64,000 bases of DNA from Lytechinus pictus (GCF_037042905.1 NC_087263.1:10540001-10604000); one strand, 5' to 3'. Shown: positions 27,249 through 38,939, counted from the first letter of the stretch. Translations and numbers: made by a program. The notes: generated by a model not told the origin, from the letters alone.

Positions 27249-27362
27249 CCAACCAACCAACCCAGCCCAACCCAACCCACCCACCCACACCCAACCCACC
27301 CCAACCCACCCCACCCCACCCCACCCACGCCAACCCAACCCAATCCACCAACCAACCAACCA
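27249..27362. repeat. (CCAA/CCCAC)n simple repeat just outside the DIRS end
   Basis: Direct read. Confidence 0.9.
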
Positions 27363-27720
27363 CTTGGTGATAATAAAATAATTCGTAAATTATACAAATA
27401 GTATGAAGTATAATTAGAATTCTATTAGTAATAATGAAGTATAAGTCGAGGAGGATAGCATTTCCCAGGTGTTAGGCAGTGAAATTCACACAATGGGATT
27501 CAAAGCAATCAAAATTCCACACAGGACCAGTTCTCTATAAAAGGCCCTAACCAATAAATAGGAACCATCTTTTCAAAGACGGCTAAGATCATACAAAAAC
27601 ACAAAGATCTTGTAAAGAACTAAAAACAGGATTGCTTTCCAATCCACTTAAGTAATTTTTCAAGATGTATACACCAAATAATCATTTGGTTTGCAAAAAT
27701 TTGTTGTATGTGTTTGAATG

Positions 27721-27982
27721 GGGCGCCGTGGTCTAGTGGTTACGACTCTCGTCTTTCAATCAGACGGACATGGGTTCAAATTCCAGGCATGATGTGTTTT
27801 CCTTCTGCAATAAAATATATACCCACCATGTGCTGCACTCACCCCAGGTGAGGAGAATGGGTACCGACAGGATCAACTCCTTGATTGCACTGAGCGCTAA
27901 GAGGCAGCTCGTGCTTAAGTCGGGGATAATAATACTAACAATGTGCCTCGGAATAGATTATTTCTAGATAGATGGCGCTATA
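27721..27982 (+). mobile_element. tRNA-derived SINE nested in the DIRS element
   Basis: ggcgccgtggtctagtgg A-box, gggttcaaattcc B-box, gctgcactcaccccaggtgagg..aatgggtacc core. Confidence 0.8.
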
Positions 27983-28071
27983 TTCCCACAAAATAAGTTC
28001 TGCATTTCAAAATTGACTTCTGTATAATCGGGAGGGAATAAAATTGTTTTGATGCAGTCATGCAGGGTGGG

Positions 28072-28188
28072 ATCCTCCTCGACTTATACTTCATTATTAC
28101 TAATATAATTCTAATTATACTTCATACTATTTGTATAATTTACGAATTCTATTACGTAACATTCGTATAAGTCTTCAGAGGATAGCAT
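28072..28188. other. Internal complementary region (ICR) of the DIRS element
   Basis: 28072-28148 is the reverse complement of 27380-27456 (1 mismatch); 28147-28188 is the exact reverse complement of 37535-37576; the halves overlap at TT 28147-28148. Confidence 0.92.
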
Positions 28189-28244
28189 GTTCAAAGCCAC
28201 ATATCAGAAGTCAATTTCAAACAATTTGAAAGTTATCTCCCATA

Positions 28245-29172
28245 TAGTCCGGGGGCTGGGAGAGTTTATTCAGCTGATCGGGTACAAAAGGTTTGATGGT
28301 TCCATCATGTTGGCATGAAAGCAGTGATCAAGGAAAAGTGTTGCTGCCTGGCCATATCCTGTACGGAAGGCCCCAATGGCCCCAAATACGGGCCCCAAAA
28401 ATGGGTTTATTCAGCTGAAAAGGTACATGGCTAATTCTTTTTGCAATGGACCGAGGATACATTGTGATTTTCAAAAATACCCATGCCAGCAACTTCATTC
28501 TGCACGGGGGCCCAGACAGTAGCCCCAAAGTGCCCATATATCTTGTATATGTCCCACAACTAATTTATTAAGTTAAAAATGTACATGGATAATTCCTTTT
28601 GCAATGGAGGCAGTATACATTGGGATTTTCAAAAATACCCATGCCAGCAATTTTATCCTGTACAGGGGCCCAGACAGTAGGCCCGAAGGGCCCCCGAAAA
28701 TGGGTTTATTCAGCTGAAAAGGTACATGGCTAATTTTTTTTGCAATGGACCGAGTATATATTGGGATTTCCCAAAATACCCATGCCAGTAACTTTATCCT
28801 GTACGGGGGCCCAGACAGTAGACCCAAAGGGCCCATATATGTCCCACAACTAATTTATTCAGCTGAAAATATACGTGGATGATTCCTTTTGAAATGGAGG
28901 CAGTATACAATGCGATTTAAAAAGAAAAACCCATGCTAGCAACTTCATCCTGTATAGGGGCCTAGACAGTAGGCCCGAAGAGCCCCCGAAAATGGGGCTA
29001 TTCAACTGAAAAGGTACATGGCTAATTCTTTTTAAAATGGAATCTGCATACTTTAAGGATCACAAAACTACCCATGCCAGCAACTTTACCCTGCCATGGG
29101 CAGCATTTTACCTGTGTGGGGTCCAAGACAGAATTCATGCAGGGCCCATTAGAATGGTGCATTATCAATATA

Positions 29173-29205
<33 letters not shown>

Positions 29206-32200
29206 GGGGGGGGGGGGATACAAAAGATCATGAAGGCCTCCATTGATAACAATGTAAGGCATGGGAGTGTTCAGGAATATCCAGCCGCATTAGACAAAAT
29301 AGTTTGAGAGGCCGACTACTGTGCAAAAACAATATGGCCCCTGAAATGATATTGTGGCTAATCTAGCTCCACGCCCTGAACCTCTTTTTATTGGGATTGC
29401 CTGATATTGCATAATGGCAACAGCCGCCTACTCTGATTTGCCTTCAACTACTTGTCAGTGATTCCAGACTACTGTACATCATGGCTTCCACAAAACAGGT
29501 GAGAAATGTTAATTGTACTCATAATTTCAGTCAAACCGATTAGACTGATTTAACTATCTTTTGAACATAATAATGATCAAGCATCATCCATTAGTTATCA
29601 ACAATAAAAAGTTTGTGCATATTTCATTAATGTGTATATACTTCATAATTAATCAATCATTACTTGTTGCTCAAAACGACCAATTAAATGATACAGTAGA
29701 TGATACCAGTTGATGTAATAAAAAGATTACAGCAAACGGAGAGTAGCACTTAGGCCGGGATGACCTTGAAGGTAGCAGCAGGGCCGAATGCAAAACAATT
29801 AAATGTTTTTTATTCCAATTTTCTCCAAACATTTATTGCATTAATTGTGGTATAATAGTCGACATGCATGCAAATTTTATAATCACAACTGCCCTCACTT
29901 GCCAGATACAATGTCCCGCCATGCGTGGATCCAATGGGCCTTAAATGCCCCCCTATCCTCCCCTCAAAAGAGGGGGGGGGGGGTAGAAAGGAGAATAGGG
30001 AAATGTGAATAGGACTGAGGGAGAAGAGAAAGGGAGAGCGGAAAGGATAGGAGGTGGAAAGGAGAGAAAATGATGAAGGGTTGGGAAAGAAAGGGAGGAA
30101 ATAGAAAAAAAGAAGGGAACAGGGGAGGGGAGAGAAAAAGAAGGGGAGGTAAGAGAGAAAAATGAGAAGGGGAGAGAGAGAGGGAGGGAAAGGGAAGGTG
30201 AAAAGAGAAAAGGAAGCAGGGAGAGAAAAGCAAGGGGAGGGTGAACAAAAATAGAGGAGAGGGTGAGAGAGGGAAGGGGAAGGGAAGAGAAAGAGGAAAT
30301 ATAAAAACTAATAGAGATTGAGAAATAACAGAATAAAAGATAGAGAAGGAGAGAAAAATGATAACTGGATAAAGGAAAGTAATTGAGGAAACAGAATGAT
30401 ATAGAGGCGATCATATAAAAGGGGAAAAGGAAAGGATAATAAAGAGAAGAAATGTATTTTTGTTTGACAAAAGCCCTTGCCGTCTCATATACAATTAAAA
30501 AAGAATAAAAGGGAATTGGAAAATATAGTTGGGTCTTGGAAGCTGAAGCAGCCTCGTCCCTTAAATGGCGACGCACAGGATTATGAGGGATAAAAGAGGA
30601 AAATAACAAGAAAGGGGGAAGAAGTTTTAAAAATATATAAACTTGGAAATAGAAAGAAAAGTAACCAAAATGAGAGGAAGAGAGGAATTGGCAAATATCA
30701 CACCTTTCAGGTTAATAAATCAAAATACTATTCTACTATATTCAGGCCTTTAACTGTAATCACCAAAAGGGATAGATATTAGTTTTAGGCACCCGGCAAT
30801 ATACTCCCATATACATAGCCCTTGTGATAATTACAAATCACTTGAAAGAGGTTTCTGGGGACACGCCATTCTGCGCGCTCGCTTCGCTCGCTGCTGCTAC
30901 TGTCATTATTTCAGTTCAAGAAAGATTATGCATGTTTCAATCTATTTTGTAAACCCTCACTTATGATGTAATTATGTAAATAGGCCTAACTACCCCTCTA
31001 TGTCTTCAGCCCGGTAAATCAAGTGTAGGTATTTCCGCCAGTTCCAAGCATACATTCGTTATCCCAAATTGAAACTAATAGGCCTATGTATTGCACACTG
31101 GGGCCCTTTCAGGCATTACTGGAAATAAGGACCAAGGTATACTGATTACATTACAAAATTAATTATCCATGTATATCTTATTATCCTTGGGGCTTTTGGG
31201 GTCGACTGCAAGTCTGGTCCTCATACAGAATAAACTTGATTGCATTGGTATTTTTAGAAACCTTAGCTAAGTGCATACAAATTCCATCCAAAAAAATTAT
31301 ATCCATGCATCACTTCTGCCAAACAAATTAGTTTTTAGACATCTGTTCCCTTTTTGGCTGCTATCTGGGCCCCCATACATGGTAAATCAGCTGGAATTGA
31401 CATTTATATGACCCCAAAGTATATGCAAGTTCCATTTAAAAAAACAATCACCCATGTCTGTCTTCAGCCTAAAATACACTTTTTGGGGAGGGGCACTATT
31501 GGGCTACTGCCTGGGCCCCCGTGCAGAATGAAGTTGCTGGCATGGCAGCTAAATAACCCCATTTTCGGGGGCTCTTCGGGCCTACTGTCTGGGCCCCGTA
31601 CAGGATAAAGTTGCTGGCATGGGTATTTTTGAAAATCCCATTGTATGCTGCCTCCATTTCAAAAGGAATTATCCGTGTACATTTTTGCTGAATATATTAG
31701 TTGTGGGGCATATGGGCACTTTGGGGCTACTGTCTGGGCCCCCATACAAGGTAAAGTTGCTGGCATGGGTAGTTTTGTGATCCTTAAAGTATGCAGATTC
31801 AATTTTAAACAGAATTAGCCATGTACATTTTCAGCTAAATAGCCCCATTTTCGGGGGCCCTTCGGGCCTACTGTGTGGGCCCCTATACGGGATAAAGTTG
31901 CTGGCAAGAGTTTTCTGTTTAAATCGCATTGTATACTGCCTCCATTGCAAAAGAAATTATCCATGTAAATTTTCAGCTGAATAAATTAGTTGTAGGACAT
32001 ATATGGGCCCTTTGGGGCTACTGTCTGGGCCCCCGTACAGGATAAAGTTGCTGTCATGGGTATTTTGGGAAATCCCAATATATACACGGTCCATTGAAAA
32101 AAGAATTAGCCATGTACAGGATAAAGGATAAAGTTGCTGGCATGGGTATTTTTGAAAATCCCATTGTATGCTGCCTCCATTTCAAAAGGAATTATCCGTG

Positions 32201-33119
32201 TACATTTTTGCTGAATAAATTAGTTGTGGGGCATATGGGCACTTTGGGGCTACTGTCTGGGCCCCCATACAAGGTAAAGTTGCTGGCATGGGTAGTTTTG
32301 TGATCCTTAAAGTATGCAGATTAAATTTTAAACAGAATTAGCCATGTACCTTTTCAGCTGAATAAATTAGTTGTAGGACATATATGGGCCCTTTTGGGGC
32401 TACTGTCTGGGCCCCCGTACAGGATAAAGTTGCTGTCATGGGTATTTTGGGAAATCCCAATATATACACGGTCCATTGAAAAAAGAATTAGCCATGTACC
32501 TTTTCTGCTGAATAAACCCATTTTCGGGGGGCCCTTCGGGCCTACTGTCTGGGCCCCTGTACAGGATAAAATTGCTGGCATGGGTATTTTTGAAAATCTC
32601 AATGTATACTGCCTCCATTGCAAAAGGAAATATCCATGTACATTTTTAGCTTAATAAATTAGTTGTGGGACATATACAGGATATATGGGCACTTTGGGGC
32701 TACTGTCTGGGCCCCCGTACAGGATGAAGTTGCTGGCATGGATATTTTTGAAAATCTCAATGTATACTCGGTCCATTGCAAAAAGAATTAGCCATGTACC
32801 TTTTCAGCTGAATAAACCCATTTTCGGGGGGCCCTTTGGGCCTACTGTCTGGGCCCCCGTACAGGATAAAGTTGCTGGCATGGTTTTTTTTGAAAATCTC
32901 AATGTATACTCGGTCCATTGCAAAAAGAATTAGCCATGTACCTTTTCAGCTGAATAAACCCATTTTTGGGGCCCGTATTTGGGGCCATTGGGGCCTTCCG
33001 TACAGGATATGGCCCGGCAGCAACACTTTTCCTTGACCACTGCCTTCATGCCAACATGATGGGACCATCAAGCCTTTTGTACCCGATCAGCTGAATAAAC
33101 TCTCCCAGCCCCCGGACTA
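28245..33119. mobile_element. Non-autonomous foldback DNA transposon with long, internally tandem TIRs (Academ-like)
   Basis: Ends TAGTCCGGGGGCTGGGAGAG... / ...CTCTCCCAGCCCCCGGACTA. 3-bp TSD ATA (28242-28244, 33120-33122). The arms (28245-~29150 and ~31100-33119) are built of ~140-158-nt units alternating between two variants. No transposase ORF. Confidence 0.8.
29968..30700 (+). repeat. Polypurine (G/A-rich) low-complexity tract in the foldback spacer
   Basis: About 700 nt strongly purine-skewed on the + strand. Confidence 0.85.
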
Positions 33120-33599
33120 ATAATGATCTCATAAAGATCATATTATCTCAACGTGGTCATACGATGTTGCCACTTGCCAAACTAGAAATATTTATAACAC
33201 TTCAGAATGAATTGACATTATGAAAATGTAATTAAGGAACACTGAATCAGCCAATGATTATATTTATATAATTATTAATAAATTGTTTCTCAATGAAGGC
33301 GAGGAAATTAATCAGTGAAATATTCCTCATCGATTCATCTTGCAAATTATCTCCAATCAATCAAGTACATATCATACTTCTATATAATCCATTGATATAA
33401 ATGTGAAATATTTTCAAATATATTTGAAATATTTTCAAATATATTTGAAATATTTGAAATATTTGAAATATTTTCAAATAATTTTATACCATTTTAAGGT
33501 TTTCTACATCAGCAGTAGAGGCGAAAATGGCCTCACTGGAAGAGCCATATATAATAATCGACGTTTAAGATAAGAATAACTAATGTTGGAAGATTCATC

Positions 33600-36500
33600 G
33601 TACTATAGGATGAAAATAATATCTTGCTTCAGATATCAAAAGTCAAGATATTTCTCTATGATCAAATCAAAAGTTTAGTGGTGAAGGAGGTAGTTAATTA
33701 TTGATGAAACGCGGAACAATTACTGAGGCATCATGGTCAGATGGTATAAAATGTAAAAACTAATTCAGTTTTTGATCTGAGACAAGGTTACTAAATATTT
33801 TTAGGGGGTTCCAATGGGTGAATACTAGACAGTACTCTTTGTCATGTTTGTGCACCTTTAACCTGAGAAGAGTAGTTTAGAAAAAGCAATCAACAAAGAA
33901 GAATTCATAATTGAAGAGAACAAAGTAGTGATGTTCAAATAATTTTCTCATCGTACAAAATAACTTTCATGACAACTCTTGAAAGTGAAATTTGGATGGT
34001 TCATTCAGCGTTTGAGCACGCTGGACGTAATTGCTGTCAGCAGAGAAGAGCAGAATTATTGACGTCAAAATAAGAAGATATAATTTATGATTGCCCCAAA
34101 AAGATTAACATTCAACAATTTGGTACAATGAAATTGAATCAAACTTCCTTGTAATTTGGTGTGCCAAGTAAAAGGATATTCTCCCGAATTGGAAGTCCAT
34201 AAAAGGCTGTAATGAATTTAGATGTAAGAATACTTGAAAAAAAAAAGCTTCCTGAAAGATTTATAAACTTGATAACCATGGTTTAGATTAAATGAAATTT
34301 CATGTTTTCAAATTTTGTTCGACTAATAAATTTTATCATTACAATTGATAAAGAGTTATATTGCTGTCAAATACTGTAATTGAGACAAGGAGTTCAACAA
34401 GGATTTGTAGGCAGTAAATTGCCTTAATTCAATAATACTTGATTATCAGCATAGTGGTGGTCGAGGGTGTAGTTTACAGCACAGCTTACAAAATTGGAGT
34501 TTATTCTTCTAATCAATCATACGTATCAATTTGAATAGTTAATGATATTGGTATTCATTTGTTTGTGAAAAACAAACGTGTTTAAAAAAAAATATTGTTC
34601 TAGGGCATAGGTGCCGTGCAAGAAATTGATTCCTAAACATTTATGTTGGTAGTTAGCAGGTCAGATACCTTACAAAACATGATCGCGACACCTTAACATG
34701 CTAACGATATTAGCAGTGATTGCGATAAATCATAGGTTGTGGAGTTTCCGGTTGGAGTATATGCATAGTTGACTGGCAAAATAAGTAATGAATCTTAATG
34801 TTGATAATTGTCAGAAATTAATTTGAGATACAAGTCCAAAATGATGACACTTCGATCTCCAATTTTTGATACATGACATAACATAGTCGTCTGATTGAAT
34901 GATGTAAATAGTAAAAGAACCAACCAGGTTAGGTCCTAGATGTGCCAAGTCAGGTGTTTTTAACTTTCCCCTGTAAAACAGACCTCGAGAGCTCGCTTCC
35001 AGAAATCCCAGTTTTATTGTTATTCATTTTTTTTTTTTCAAACTATTTATCACCACAAGTTCATTTTTTTGTGTGTGTGTATTTCCCTCGTGATCGAGGA
35101 GTTAGTAATGAAAAAACTCAATTTCAGCGATACAAATGTACAAATCAAAGCAGCATCCTCTAGGGATCATAATGGCTTATACAATATTTTATATCAGATG
35201 ACTGATTGTTAACATTCATGAAAAGTTCTCTTGGGAATCCATGTATTATATAAAGTTACTTTAAATATAGTTAAGTCTTCTGGGTAGCATATTGTATAAT
35301 TTTGCATGGCACAACGTTGATGGTTCATGGTTGAGTCTTGTACAAGATGAGTACAGGGTGGAAGAAATTTCAACTTTGATTAAACAATGGATCTCTGTCC
35401 AGTGTTTTTACCAATACCAAAATTGTCGGAATGCATGTCTGCATACATTCTAAACTTTTGAAAGGTTTAAAGGTTACTTAATCCAACTTGTTGTACACTT
35501 CGGGAATTTGGAATACTCTTAGTATCAACGGCTTGCGTTGGAAAGGATAATTAGGTGCTTTGTCAAGTTAGAAATCCGATCTGTTTAAATCTTCCTTGTT
35601 CAATCTTTTTAATTAAAATATTCTTTGTTCAATGAATAGATAACAAGAATACATGTACATGTAGATAGGCCCATGATCTGACAAATCTTCAATGTAGGTT
35701 GTCAAGGACAACATGAATGAATGGGAAGGTCTATCAGCAAAAGAATGTTCAGGCTTGGGCATGTAGCCTATTTACAAAGTCTGGTGAAAATGTACTAGCT
35801 ACCTCTTTTAATATAAGAATATAGTAATGAGCTATTCATTTAGGCGCCTTGCACGGATGAACTACTAGTTGGAACAATTTTGCGTGTATTATCTATTGTT
35901 GTCTGGTAAACCTCAGACAATGAGATTTGCATCTTGGCAATTAAAATTTTCATTTCAACATGAAGTTCCTTCCAGATCCATAATCATTTAACATGTTTTA
36001 ATGAAGCATTTTTCATCATGTTTTTTTTTTCCTTTGAGGAATGTAAAGCTTCATATTACAAGCAACAAATGGATGATAGTTGAATTTCGTGACAAAACTT
36101 GGCTTTTCCCGGCTTAAAAGCAATTCAAATGACTATGAATTTGCCACTAACCAATCGGGTTATGCGAATATGTAAAATGGTACAGTAGTAAGTCTAAGCA
36201 TTGTCCACGCGAGTTGTGAGATATCTAGCGATAATATCGCTGTTGTGAAGCTCTTGGTACAACTGTTTAATTTGTTTAAAATTTAACACAAGAGCATATC
36301 GATCATCGTTTTATAAGCAGTGAAGAAGATTCCCTGCGTTGTGCAAAATGCCTTTTGTGTACAATGTACTCTAGGTTATAAAGAGAGGCCTGCGCCAGTA
36401 CATGTTATAGCGATGTCAGTTTATACTCCAAATCGATGCTTTTTAAACATGTTTAAACGAAAATGGTTCTTGTAAAAGATTCCTATGAGGGATGATTCAA

Positions 36501-37280
36501 AATGTAGGCATAACAATTTTTATACATAGATACACATGTTCATAATGTCCGGGAACGTCACCCATTATTATGATATGGCGAAAGATTCATGCCAATCTAT
36601 GGCAAAGGAATGGTAGCATCTATAGAGTAAGAAACTCTCCATCTTTGGGATGGTGAAAACAAAATCGACTGTCAGAGCAGTATTAACTAATACAAGTAAA
36701 TCCAGTACACAGTTGGCCATGACCATCAGTATTATCGGTGCTCCGGTGTCGTATTGAATTCTTCTGTACACAATCCGATTGGAATATAGGCGTATATAGC
36801 AATTACTCGACAACAATTTTAAGAAGGGTTAAATTAAATCCCTTGGTCCAGCACAGTTGCTGTTATTGGTTGGTATACTAACCACACATTAGAACGAGTA
36901 TTGTAGAAAATTTGGCAATGGCTAGTAAGAAAAAGTTGGAAGCAATTTTATTATTCGGATGAATTGAAGTCAAAATAAGGCTGTAATAAGGGTAAGGCTC
37001 GCAATCCAAATCAATGACATGTATCGATGTCATATCAGCATACGGCTTATTTCGATAAACCAAAGAGTTTACAGAGTAAATCATTATAATGATGTGAAGG
37101 TGTGCTGAATCAGCGAAATTTCTAGAAGAAAATATAAGGCAGCGCCCCAATGAAGAAACAGTGTAGGGCAGCCCCCTGATGTAGAAAGGTATGGCTCACA
37201 TACCAAAAATATGGGTGGAGGAGCCCTCCTGCCCAAGTCAGCATGACTCGCATGCCTTAAAATATCAGAGACTGCCATGA
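33600..37280 (-). pseudogene. Decayed DIRS gag / RT / tyrosine recombinase coding remnants
   Basis: RT-like IKKIEQGRF...LSFP (~35613-35540; cf. PKKxxGxFRLIxxLSxP) and AFRQ (35434-35423); YR box-I-like FITAFYGL (34216-34193); weakly gag-like ORF 36816-36568. Many stops and frameshifts; boundaries approximate. Confidence 0.55.
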
Positions 37281-38939
37281 TAGCTGCCGCTTTTACTCAA
37301 CTCCAGGCGGCTTTCCATGCCTGCTCCCCAACGGAAAGCAGGGCTGAAGGAGACCGTAGGCTCACGTCTCCTCAATACTCACCATGAAGATAAAGATGTG
37401 TAGTCACTGCCGTCACACTTGAAAAAGATGGTTCCTATTCATTGGTTAGGGCCTTTTATAGAGAACTGGTCCTGTGTGGAATTTTGATTGCTTTGAATCC
37501 CATTGTGTGAATTTCACTGCCTAACACCTGGGAAATGCTATCCTCTGAAGACTTATACGAATGTTACGTAATAGAAACAGATTTAAAACAACAGCATAAC
37601 TCAGGAACTTAACAGCAAACATAACATGTCTGTGAGTGTCATACTCTTTCTATTTATACCTTTGGCCTTCCTCGGCCCACATCAAAATTGTTGCTACAGT
37701 AACATAACAATATTTAAATCATCTTAAAGCTAACCAATGAAATTAAAGGAAATAGAAGAACCCAACTGAAATGTAGTAATCCAGTTCATAATATAAACTA
37801 ATGAGGAATAAGATGAAGGTGATAAAAGATGTCTGGGTAATTATGTAATAATAGCATGAGAAACTAAGGAGTCAGGTGAGGGATGGAATGAGTGGAACAC
37901 CTGAATAGAGAAGGAATGAAGATGACAAAAGAGAATCAGTGGAAAAGAATCCAATGTGGAGAAGGATGAATGAAAACTGAATATAATTAAACTCAAATAA
38001 CCTAAGTTCAGACTGCAAGGGCAGTGCTGAAAAGAAATGCAAATGAACTCAAGTCTAGACGGAACAGAAATGTAAAACAGCTGAAGGAAGCACAAGTTAA
38101 AGAAAATGAACAAAATAGGAAAATGACAAAATAACCATCCTACACAATCAAATATGAAGTGATTTATGTCCGCTTCAAGTCATTTTAGACTCCTTTTTTT
38201 AAAGCCATCTTGGATTTTTGGGAATACCAGAACATAGAATGTCCTTGTAACTTTCCCAATGTACTACTTGACCCTTAATATCATTGAATAGAAACCAAAT
38301 TAAGGCAACTTAATACATCGGTCACATTTACTCTACGGCGGCCGTACGGCGAGTCGAAAATAGCCGTTTTATTCATTTTTATTCAAACCACCTATATGTA
38401 GCTGGTACAAAAAATGTTAAAACGACTGTTTTCGACTCGCCGTACGGCCGCCGAGGTATAAGTAATAGATGAAGTGCGAATTTTCAGGCTACGAAAGCCA
38501 TGTTGGACGCCATTTCGGATTTTCTAGGTAACCTCGATTGCTTATGTTCACTCTAACCTGTATCAACAAATCTTTTAGTCCATAGACCATGAGATATGCA
38601 TGGAAATAAAATGTGTATCGTGGATAGTTGGTGAGTTATGTCTATTTTCAGTGATTGGCAGCCATCCTGAAAAAAAAATCCCGGATGCGGATTTCGGTAG
38701 ATTTTTATTGTGTTATTTTCTGAGGTCAAATAGTACCAGAAACAGTTGAAAAAAGATTTGTTGCAATTTTTTAGGCCCAGCCAATATATTGACCCGACTA
38801 TAGGTATACATCAGATATTTCTCTTAGCTGATCTTTAAATCATCTTGCTTATCTGAAGTAGGGTTTGATTTAAGCTTTGGTCTAAAGCTGCGGTTTAAAT
38901 ATGGACAGCCAATCGTGGCATTAATCTATATCTGTAGGG

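What the first reader, a model, noticed from the sequence alone, without database searches (positions are those of the whole stretch)
27380..37576. Cryptic DIRS retrotransposon with near-perfect termini and ICR but destroyed ORFs
Seen: inverted LTR cores differ at 1 of ~120 nt. The ICR matches one outer end exactly (42 nt) and the other with 1 mismatch (77 nt). There is no TSD and no long ORF, only faint gag/RT/YR motifs on the minus strand. Known: DIRS1-type elements have inverted LTRs plus an ICR that templates the ends, and they integrate as circles through a tyrosine recombinase. Inference: cis-signals this fresh around so decayed a body suggest a full-length NON-autonomous DIRS lineage that kept being mobilised in trans long after losing coding capacity. 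An ORF scan misses it entirely.
Basis: partly seen in the sequence, partly recalled or inferred. Interest (0 to 1): 0.8.

Follow-up and report, generated by a model that had tools for sequence, protein, structure and literature searches.

The report
Non-coding DIRS1-type retrotransposon family copy
This is one young copy of a 5.3-kb DIRS1-type retrotransposon family that has no genes and must borrow enzymes from other elements; that kind is known but rarely documented, and this copy is also split by an unrelated DNA transposon.

Summary
The structural observation holds. There are inverted terminal repeats with a 121-nt core (1 mismatch). An internal complementary region (ICR, 28072-28192) is the reverse complement of the left end (77 nt, 1 mismatch) joined to the right end (45 nt, exact). 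There is no target duplication and no ORF.

The element belongs to a family found at about 28 loci, with at least 12 full-length 5.3-kb copies that differ by 0.5-8%. None has an open frame over 105 aa. Only 1-2 of the 79-95 stop triplets per sense frame are private to this copy, so the family amplified while already non-coding.

- No gag, RT or YR trace exists by Pfam or by profiles of this genome's own DIRS proteins.
- The body is not a decayed coding region. A relic with the same termini (L039) keeps a YR fragment, and its interior is unrelated to this one.
- The SINE at 27721-27982 is inherited by every copy, not private.

Only 28245-33119 is a private insertion; it is a TIR DNA transposon with a 3-bp duplication.

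Paired substitutions in both repeat arms, a conserved ICR and AAT at both junctions fit the published DIRS-1 cycle. No autonomous partner with these termini was found.

Verdict: a new member of a known kind (compare TOC1), of moderate interest.

The parts
27380..27578 (-). 3' inverted terminal repeat (the element's sense strand is the window's minus strand). The outer 77 nt (27380-27456) are complementary to the ICR. The core 27451-27571 is repeated in inverted form at the other end. The first three bases, AAT (27380-27382), are the junction trinucleotide.
27721..27982 (+). Full-length 262-bp tRNA-like SINE, antisense to the element. It inserted in the family's ancestor and was then copied with the element. 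It is present in all copies that are at least 90% identical and absent from the older lineage (L041, L021).
   Evidence: not called as a tRNA or Rfam family
28072..28192 (-). Internal complementary region (ICR). 28072-28148 is the reverse complement of the left (3') end, with 1 mismatch. 28147-28192 is the reverse complement of the right (5') end, exact. The junction reads AATAG-AAT-TCG on the sense-equivalent strand.
   Evidence: homologous to the ICRs of autonomous DIRS1-like elements of the same genome
28193..28241 (-). The last 49 nt of the non-coding body before the ICR, cut off from the rest of the body by the nested insertion.
28242..28244 (.). Left copy of the 3-bp target duplication (ATA) made by the nested transposon. 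The right copy is at 33120-33122. Uninterrupted family copies have this triplet once.
28245..33119 (.). Nested 4.9-kb non-coding TIR DNA transposon, private to this copy. Its long terminal inverted repeats are built of ~146-bp subrepeats (28245-29093 and 31568-33119). The centre is purine-rich and low in complexity.
33120..37417 (-). Non-coding body of the element (4.3 kb). It has no RT/RH/MT/YR/gag similarity, and its stops are shared with the other copies. The 5'-proximal ~330 nt (about 37090-37417) are the best-conserved part of the body. The few RNA-seq reads cluster there.
37418..37576 (-). 5' inverted terminal repeat. The core is 37425-37545. The outer 45 nt (37532-37576) are complementary to the ICR. 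The element ends ...AATAGAA. The next base is T in 12 of 13 copies, giving AAT; in this copy it is A.

Best explanation
The region 27380-37576 is one copy of a non-autonomous DIRS1-type (tyrosine-recombinase) retrotransposon. It is 5,319 bp long once a later 4.9-kb DNA-transposon insertion is removed.

The element keeps every cis feature of the DIRS-1 replication cycle: inverted terminal repeats, an ICR that carries the complements of both outer ends side by side, and a junction trinucleotide (AAT). Its 4.3-kb interior encodes nothing and is not recognisably derived from DIRS genes.

The proposed cycle has four steps.
1. Minus-strand transcription starts at or near the inner edge of the right-hand repeat.
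2. A DIRS reverse transcriptase supplied in trans makes the cDNA.
3. One repeat core is restored from the other, and the outer ends are restored on the ICR. This gives a junction AATAG-AAT-TCG.
4. A tyrosine recombinase supplied in trans recombines the junction AAT with a genomic AAT. AAT then lies at both ends and no target duplication forms.

What is shown and what is inferred:
- Shown: the anatomy, the multi-copy ORF-less family, the shared stops, the conserved ICR, the paired changes in the repeat arms, the AAT at both ends, and homology of the ICR and junction to those of intact DIRS1-like elements in the same genome.
- Inferred: the RNA intermediate, supply of enzymes in trans, and which helper family supplies them.
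For: STRUCTURE.

FAMILY
- A genome search finds about 28 loci with these termini and at least 12 full-length copies.
- Substitution divergence is 0.5-2.9% within subfamily A, about 5% between A and B, and about 7.5% to L018. This copy is 1.3-1.5% from L002, L003 and L005.
- No copy has an internal open frame over 105 aa.
- Of the 79-95 stop triplets per minus frame, 59-68 are kept in at least 10 of the 12 other copies, and only 1-2 are private.

CIS CONSTRAINT
- ICR divergence between subfamilies A and B is 0.5%, against 5-6% in the body.
- Each copy's ICR matches its own ends with 0-3 mismatches.

HOMOGENISATION OF THE REPEAT ARMS
- Subfamily B carries 4 substitutions in the repeat core, L011 carries 2 and L006 carries 1. 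Every one is present in both arms.
- Single-arm differences are private to single copies.
- This matches the published step 'left LTR restored using the right LTR as template' (PMC7192593).

INTEGRATION
- All 13 copies start AATTCG and end AATAGAA. The next base is T in 12 of 13. The ICR holds AAT only once.
- This is the 3-bp junction rule described for DIRS1-like elements (PMC3266345; PMC7192593).

KINSHIP
- The genome has intact DIRS1-like elements with an RNaseH/MT ORF and an overlapping 331-aa YR. Only the 3' part of the upstream ORF lies in the fetched loci.
- These have the same ICR and 3'-repeat layout. Their ICR and junction align with ours at about 60% identity, sharing the motif ACGTnATAnAAT.
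- The relic L039, with 88-92% identical termini, retains a YR C-terminal fragment upstream of its ICR (E 6e-14).

RNA
- The few stranded RNA-seq reads inside the element all have one orientation. They cluster at 37231-37412, just inside the right-hand repeat.
Against: - No autonomous element with these termini was found. Apart from the L039 relic's YR fragment, none of the loci carrying them has RT or YR. No YR hit lies within 10 kb of any terminus hit. The closest YR to the L039 fragment is 64-65% identical.
- The RNA evidence is thin. There are 28 reads in one run and 6 in another. They carry variants of other copies, the library's strandedness is assumed, and the read ends may be duplicates.
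- The ICR is nearly invariant across the young copies. Direct covariation between the ICR and the ends therefore could not be shown. The old relic L039 has simply decayed, with 11 mismatches in 82 nt.
- Genome searches score only the best candidates.
Confidence: 0.85

Rival explanations
1. It is a single dead autonomous DIRS copy whose genes eroded in place after insertion. This is the 'destroyed ORFs' reading taken literally.
For: The length (5.3 kb) is that of a coding DIRS element. The structure is complete.
Against: - The termini differ from the ICR and from each other at only 2 of about 240 compared positions. The interior meanwhile has random stop density in every frame.
- The same stops occur in 12 other copies in unrelated flanks.
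- No protein remnant is found, although broken controls are detected.
Confidence: 0.02
2. The family moves or moved as DNA, by tyrosine-recombinase excision and integration of a circle (Crypton-like), without reverse transcription. The ICR would be a leftover.
For: - Integration at a shared trinucleotide without a TSD is a YR signature that does not itself need an RNA step.
- No helper RT was linked to the family.
- The RNA evidence is weak.
Against: - The ICR is the most conserved part of the element. It diverges 0.5% between subfamilies against 5-6% in the body.
- The ICR stays matched to both ends in each copy. That makes sense only if it templates the ends.
- Substitutions appear in both repeat arms together, as expected from template-directed restoration.
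- The ICR is experimentally essential for DIRS-1 retrotransposition (PMC7192593).
- Copy number has risen through several waves.
Confidence: 0.06
3. The family is a non-autonomous DIRS whose cognate helper is extinct. On this reading all copies are fossils and nothing mobilises them today.
For: - No cognate autonomous element is in the assembly.
- The only relative that carries a YR remnant (L039) is old. Its ICR differs from its own end at 11 of 82 positions.
Against: - L002, L003 and L005 differ by only 0.5-0.6%. L009, L010 and L013 differ by 0.6-1.0%. Several copies have perfect ICR-to-end matches. A helper was therefore active very recently and should still be recognisable in an 812-Mb assembly.
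- Intact DIRS1-like families with related junctions are present.
- The family is transcribed at a low level.
Confidence: 0.25

Closest known systems
DIRS-1 of Dictyostelium discoideum and the DIRS1-like superfamily, including the sea-urchin and other animal DIRS1-like elements (PMC3266345; PMC7192593)
   Same: - Inverted terminal repeats whose outer ends are non-identical.
- An ICR made of the complements of both outer ends placed side by side, lying near the 3' repeat.
- The 3-bp junction sequence at both ends and no TSD.
- The repeat arms are homogenised.
- The ICR and junction are homologous (~60%) to those of intact DIRS1-like elements (RNaseH/MT ORF plus YR) in the same genome.
   Different: It has no gag, RT, RNase H, methyltransferase or YR, and no detectable remnant of them. 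A hitch-hiking SINE lies between the ICR and the 3' repeat.
TOC1 of Chlamydomonas reinhardtii, described as a non-autonomous DIRS retrotransposon (PMC9940879)
   Same: It is a non-autonomous member of the DIRS order. By my recollection, not checked here, TOC1 is also several kb long with no recognisable coding capacity.
   Different: By my recollection, not checked here, TOC1 has the PAT/split-direct-repeat type of termini rather than inverted repeats plus an ICR. TOC3 is a DIRS retrotransposon of the same alga (named as such in PMC9940879), which I recall, unchecked, as TOC1's related coding element. No cognate helper was found for the family described here. TOC1 is from a green alga; this family is from an animal genome, apparently a sea urchin by an unverified note on a neighbouring gene.
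LARDs and TRIMs, the non-autonomous derivatives of LTR retrotransposons
   Same: LARDs likewise keep their termini and cis signals around a long non-coding interior that is conserved within the family but unrelated to the helper's genes. They too amplify in trans.
   Different: LARDs and TRIMs have direct LTRs, a tRNA primer-binding site and polypurine tract, DDE-integrase integration and a 4-6 bp TSD. None of these is present here.
Engineered truncated DIRS-1 (trDIRS-1bsr) in a helper-donor assay (PMC7192593)
   Same: A DIRS transcript without RT is reverse transcribed by endogenous RT acting in trans.
   Different: In that experiment a complete trans cycle could not be scored. In this family, repeated complete cycles are implied by the natural copies.

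Membership tests
DIRS1-like retrotransposons (order DIRS) | Inverted terminal repeats with non-identical outer ends | tested here: met
   The 121-128 nt inverted core has 1 mismatch. The outer 77 nt (left) and 45 nt (right) differ from each other.
DIRS1-like retrotransposons (order DIRS) | An ICR carrying the complements of both outer ends side by side, located upstream of the 3' repeat | tested here: met
   28072-28192: 77 nt with 1 mismatch and 45 nt exact, overlapping by 2 nt. The same holds in 12 other copies with 0-3 mismatches. The layout is the same in this genome's autonomous DIRS elements.
DIRS1-like retrotransposons (order DIRS) | No TSD; the same trinucleotide at both ends, one copy coming from the circle junction and one from the target | tested here: met
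   AAT begins all 13 copies. AAT follows AATAG at the right end in 12 of 13. The ICR holds AAT once. The rule is described in PMC3266345 and PMC7192593.
DIRS1-like retrotransposons (order DIRS) | Encodes RT/RNase H (plus methyltransferase) and a tyrosine recombinase | tested here: not met
   No hit by Pfam on pieces, by in-genome YR and RH/MT HMMs, or by RT phmmer on six-frame translations of 13 copies. Controls were positive. The element is therefore filed as a non-autonomous derivative, not as an autonomous member.
DIRS1-like retrotransposons (order DIRS) | Sequence homology to bona fide members | tested here: met
   - The ICR and junction region aligns with three autonomous families, with 61% mean column identity and shared flanking motifs.
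- The relic L039 has the same termini and keeps a YR fragment (E 6e-14).
- The homology is limited to cis regions.
DIRS1-like retrotransposons (order DIRS) | Replication through an RNA/cDNA intermediate | tested here: inconclusive
   Evidence in favour is indirect. The repeat arms show paired substitutions. The ICR is conserved. There are a few reads of one orientation in RNA-seq. No cDNA or circle junction could be examined.
Non-autonomous retrotransposon mobilised in trans (TOC1-like or LARD-like) | Many copies in unrelated flanks, all lacking coding capacity, with the defects shared between copies | tested here: met
Non-autonomous retrotransposon mobilised in trans (TOC1-like or LARD-like) | An autonomous partner with matching termini and cis signals in the same genome | tested here: not met
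   - None of the ~28 loci carrying these termini has RT or YR, apart from the YR fragment in the L039 relic.
- The nearest YR is 64-65% identical to the L039 fragment.
- Only related junction motifs are seen in the intact families.
- The search was limited because only the best candidates are scored and no more genome DNA could be fetched.

The most novel reading that the evidence does not exclude
This is a long-lived DIRS1-type parasite-of-parasites. Its interior was never, or is no longer, related to DIRS genes, and it has no cognate helper in the genome. It is cross-mobilised by heterologous DIRS1-like families that share only about 60% of the ICR and terminus sequence and the junction motif. 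That would mean the DIRS RT and YR machinery recognises the architecture (end-to-ICR complementarity plus the junction trinucleotide) rather than a specific sequence. It would also be natural proof that every DIRS protein acts in trans.
Probability: 0.3. Interest if true: 0.55.

Novelty: new member of a known kind. Interest (0 to 1): 0.35.

Why it matters
DIRS elements are the least understood order of retrotransposons. The only experimental system, Dictyostelium DIRS-1, showed that the ICR is essential and that RT can act in trans. It could not score a complete trans cycle (PMC7192593).

A natural, recently amplified, gene-less DIRS1-type family gives population-scale evidence on three points:
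- The whole cycle works in trans.
- The repeat arms are restored from one another.
- The 3-bp junction rule holds.

It also delimits the minimal cis requirements: two repeats, the ICR and roughly 330 nt of 5'-proximal sequence.

Practically, ORF-based and profile-based TE annotation misses such families entirely. They would be labelled 'unknown repeat' in echinoderm genomes.

Tried and rejected
- Pfam on the 10 longest minus-strand stop-free pieces: nothing.
- tblastx and blastn of the element against 12 YR-encoding loci: nothing.
- HMMs of in-genome YR and RH/MT, and phmmer with five RT/pol queries and a gypsy gag-region ORF: nothing on any copy.
- The 105-aa open frame at 36881-37195 as a possible gag remnant. 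It matches only family copies, is broken in subfamily B, and has no Pfam hit. Rejected.
- The RT next to the older relative L041 as the family's own RT. It belongs to a LINE family with about 1,044-aa ORFs and over 14,000 candidate hits. Rejected.
- The Ty3/gypsy-type pol in L025. It is a nested LTR element inside another copy, not a partner.
- Covariation between the ICR and the ends across lineages. This was uninformative: the ICR is nearly invariant in young copies and the relic L039 is simply decayed.
- tRNA and Rfam calls on the SINE and on the whole region: none.
- The search for a cognate helper through the L039 YR fragment and the L039 interior. It found only 58-65% aa relatives and one 74-75% DNA relative on C12.


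Full report
WHAT IS THERE

The repeat finder reports inverted arms 27451-27578 / 37418-37545 (128 nt, 98% complementary). An anchored comparison shows one mismatch in the 121-nt core. That mismatch is private to this copy.

The stretch 28072-28192 is the reverse complement of the left 77 nt (1 mismatch), immediately followed by the reverse complement of the right 45 nt (0 mismatches). The two halves overlap by 2 nt. This is the anatomy of DIRS-1: inverted repeats whose outer ends are repeated side by side in an internal complementary region (PMC7192593).

The interior has no open frame longer than 105 aa. Stop density is 0.054-0.073 per codon in all six frames, about what I estimate by hand (~0.07) for unconstrained sequence of this base composition.

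THE WINDOW AND GENOME

The window is C19:10540001-10604000 of an 812-Mb eukaryotic assembly. An earlier, untested note about an SM30/SM50-like gene elsewhere in the window suggests a sea urchin.

IT IS A FAMILY, AND THE FAMILY IS GENE-LESS

A search of the window's own genome with 33120-37576 finds many near-full-length matches at 83-96% BLAST identity, gaps counted as differences. A search with the left repeat finds about 28 loci.

I removed 28242-33119 and laid the remaining 5,319 bp on the fetched loci. Every other copy is contiguous across the 28241|33120 junction, so that 4.9 kb is a private insertion. Every copy is also contiguous across 27721-27982.

Twelve further full-length copies were cut out. 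All begin AATTCG and end AATAGAA, and all sit in unrelated flanks.

Substitution divergence:
- 0.5-2.9% within subfamily A; this copy is 1.3-1.5% from L002, L003 and L005.
- 0.6-1.0% among L009, L010 and L013.
- About 5% between subfamilies A and B.
- About 7.5% to L018.

No copy has an internal open frame above 105 aa. This copy has 79-95 stop triplets in each minus-strand frame of the body. Of these, 59-68 are stop triplets in at least 10 of the 12 other copies, and only 1-2 are private. The ancestor of the whole family was therefore already non-coding, and it was copied many times in several waves.

NO TRACE OF DIRS GENES

- Pfam finds nothing in the ten longest minus-strand pieces even at E<=10.
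- The genome does contain intact DIRS1-like elements. They have a roughly 370-aa ORF end with RNase H and Dam-like methyltransferase matches, overlapped by a 324-336-aa tyrosine recombinase.
- Profiles built from ten of these YRs and eight of the upstream ORFs were run against six-frame translations of all 13 copies, with stops written X. So was phmmer with five RT/pol queries and a gypsy gag-region ORF. They gave only E>=0.5, non-colinear hits. Broken control copies scored 1e-18 or better with the YR profile and 2e-5 with the RNaseH/MT profile.
- The 105-aa frame matches nothing outside the family and is broken in subfamily B.

THE BODY IS NOT AN ERODED CODING REGION

One locus, L039 (C16:28179581-28182250), is a 2.66-kb element whose repeats and ICR are 88-92% identical to ours. 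At the place where a DIRS YR gene ends, it keeps a YR C-terminal fragment. The fragment scores E 6e-14 against the in-genome YR profile and is 42-56% identical at the amino-acid level to the autonomous families over its two aligned pieces.

Outside the repeats and the ICR region, L039 and our family share no similarity by blastn (word size 7) or tblastx. The termini differ by only about 10%. A body descended from that coding region by decay should still align, and it does not. The interior of the 5.3-kb family therefore looks replaced or of other origin.

More distant relatives of that interior exist at 68-80% identity (L022, L023). In the stretches fetched they have no open frame of DIRS-gene size: none of 150 aa or more in L022, and 172 aa at most in L023, with no Pfam hit. 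This suggests the non-coding body is old.

THE SINE

27721-27982 is a full-length copy of a tRNA-like SINE family with about 3,400 candidate matches. Free copies are 82-85% identical to it. The 20 best matches at 90% or above comprise this copy itself and 19 matches lying inside other copies of this DIRS family. An older lineage with 83-85% identical termini (L041, L021) lacks it cleanly. It is thus an insertion into the family's ancestor that has been copied along ever since. It is an independent marker that a defective master was propagated.

EVIDENCE ON THE MECHANISM

(a) ICR conservation. The ICR is the most conserved part of the element. It diverges 0.5% between subfamilies, against 5-6% in the body. 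In each copy it matches that copy's own ends with 0-3 mismatches.

(b) Paired substitutions. Subfamily B carries four substitutions in the repeat core relative to subfamily A, L011 carries two and L006 carries one. All seven are present in both arms. Single-arm differences are private to individual copies. The two arms are therefore made identical at each round of copying. The Cappello model proposes exactly this: the left LTR is restored using the right LTR as template, and the outer ends are then restored on the ICR (PMC7192593).

(c) The junction trinucleotide. AAT occurs once in the ICR junction (AATAG-AAT-TCG) but at both ends of integrated copies. Twelve of 13 right flanks start with T after the terminal AA. 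With T at a frequency of about 0.31, my hand estimate of the chance probability is about 1e-5. This is the published 3-bp junction rule for DIRS1-like integration without target duplication (PMC3266345; PMC7192593).

(d) Orientation and kinship. On the window's minus strand, the region from the ICR to the end aligns with the sense strand of three autonomous families downstream of their YR genes. Shared blocks lie before, within and after the ICR, and the junction motif is ACGTnATAnAAT. This fixes the sense strand and places the element among this genome's DIRS1-like elements.

(e) RNA. In two ribo-depleted RNA-seq runs of the same species label, 28 and 6 reads lay on 33120-37900. All reads in the element bins up to 37439 have the first mate on the + strand. 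They cluster at 37231-37412, just inside the right-hand repeat, and they carry variants of other copies. This fits a minus-strand transcript that starts near the inner edge of the 5' repeat. The numbers are small and the library's strandedness is assumed.

THE HELPER

No locus carrying these termini has RT or YR apart from the L039 relic. No YR hit lies within 10 kb of a terminus hit. The nearest YRs to the L039 fragment are 64-65% identical. L039's interior has only one 74-75% DNA relative.

Some copies differ by only 0.5%, so a helper must have been active recently. The likeliest candidates are the intact DIRS1-like families with related junctions, but I could not read more genome DNA to test this. 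Contigs from DNA runs of a second species label hold pieces of the family at 95% identity or above.

THE PRIVATE INSERTION

28245-33119 has perfect terminal inverted repeats starting TAGTCC. Its long arms are built of ~146-bp subrepeats, and it has no coding capacity. It is flanked by ATA on each side, where uninterrupted copies have the triplet once. Its terminus recurs in the genome as inverted pairs 4.7-6.7 kb apart at about 95% identity. It is a TIR DNA transposon that landed 52 nt from the ICR after this DIRS copy had inserted.

COMPARISON WITH WHAT IS KNOWN

All cis features of DIRS1-like elements are met. The coding features are tested and not met, so this is a non-autonomous derivative.

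Non-autonomous DIRS-order elements are known: TOC1 of Chlamydomonas is described as one (PMC9940879). A phrase search of the paper library for 'non-autonomous DIRS' returned only that work. Trans action of the DIRS-1 RT has been shown experimentally, but a full trans cycle could not be scored (PMC7192593).

The finding is therefore a new member of a known kind. It is well suited to illustrate the DIRS cycle, but it is not a new mechanism. Other first-stage notes on this genome mention a possible non-coding Ngaro/PAT-type element and an intact PAT-type element on other pieces. I did not test them.

VERDICT

It is wrong about the origin of the body and about the SINE. Interest is moderate.

Noticed in passing
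window 28245-33119: A non-coding 4.9-kb TIR DNA transposon. Its long inverted arms are made of ~146-bp tandem subrepeats and it has a 3-bp ATA target duplication. Its termini recur genome-wide as inverted pairs 4.7-6.7 kb apart at about 95% identity. The superfamily was not determined.
   Followed up: partly
window 27721-27982: A tRNA-like SINE of 262 bp with A and B box-like head, belonging to a family with about 3,400 candidate matches in the genome. Neither ARAGORN nor Rfam recognises it.
   Followed up: partly
L039:1581-4250 (C16:28179581-28182250): An old 2.66-kb deletion derivative with the same repeats and ICR. It keeps about 88 aa of a YR C-terminus and a 147-aa open frame of unknown nature. 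It appears to be the only relic of the coding ancestor of these termini.
   Followed up: partly
L007:1-1804 (C1:26129572-26131375): Two 3' portions (repeat, SINE, ICR) of different subfamilies, 93% and 98% identical to this copy, abut tail-to-tail. Both are truncated at about position 75-80, exactly where the outer end meets the repeat core. This could be an insertion into, or recombination with, another copy. It is unexplained.
   Followed up: no
G000:C19:3362357-3386160 (L041, L021): Two older 3' ends of the lineage (83-85% identical, without the SINE) face each other 23 kb apart. LINE insertions lie between them.
   Followed up: partly
G000:C6:21258884-21259414: A YR match inside a 952-aa open frame, much longer than the usual ~330-aa DIRS YR ORF. 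It may be a fused pol-YR frame. It is also the weak DNA relative of the L039 YR fragment.
   Followed up: no
window 27250-27365: A CCAAC/CCCAC-type microsatellite-like tract lies immediately left of the element's insertion site.
   Followed up: no
window 37760-37900: The flank just right of the element has very high summed contig depth in the second species' DNA run (about 2,860), so it belongs to another abundant repeat.
   Followed up: no
L025:3-4137 (C3:53262002-53266136): A Ty3/gypsy-type LTR retrotransposon with intact 795-aa pol and 656-aa upstream frames is nested inside the 3' region of another copy of this DIRS family.
   Followed up: partly
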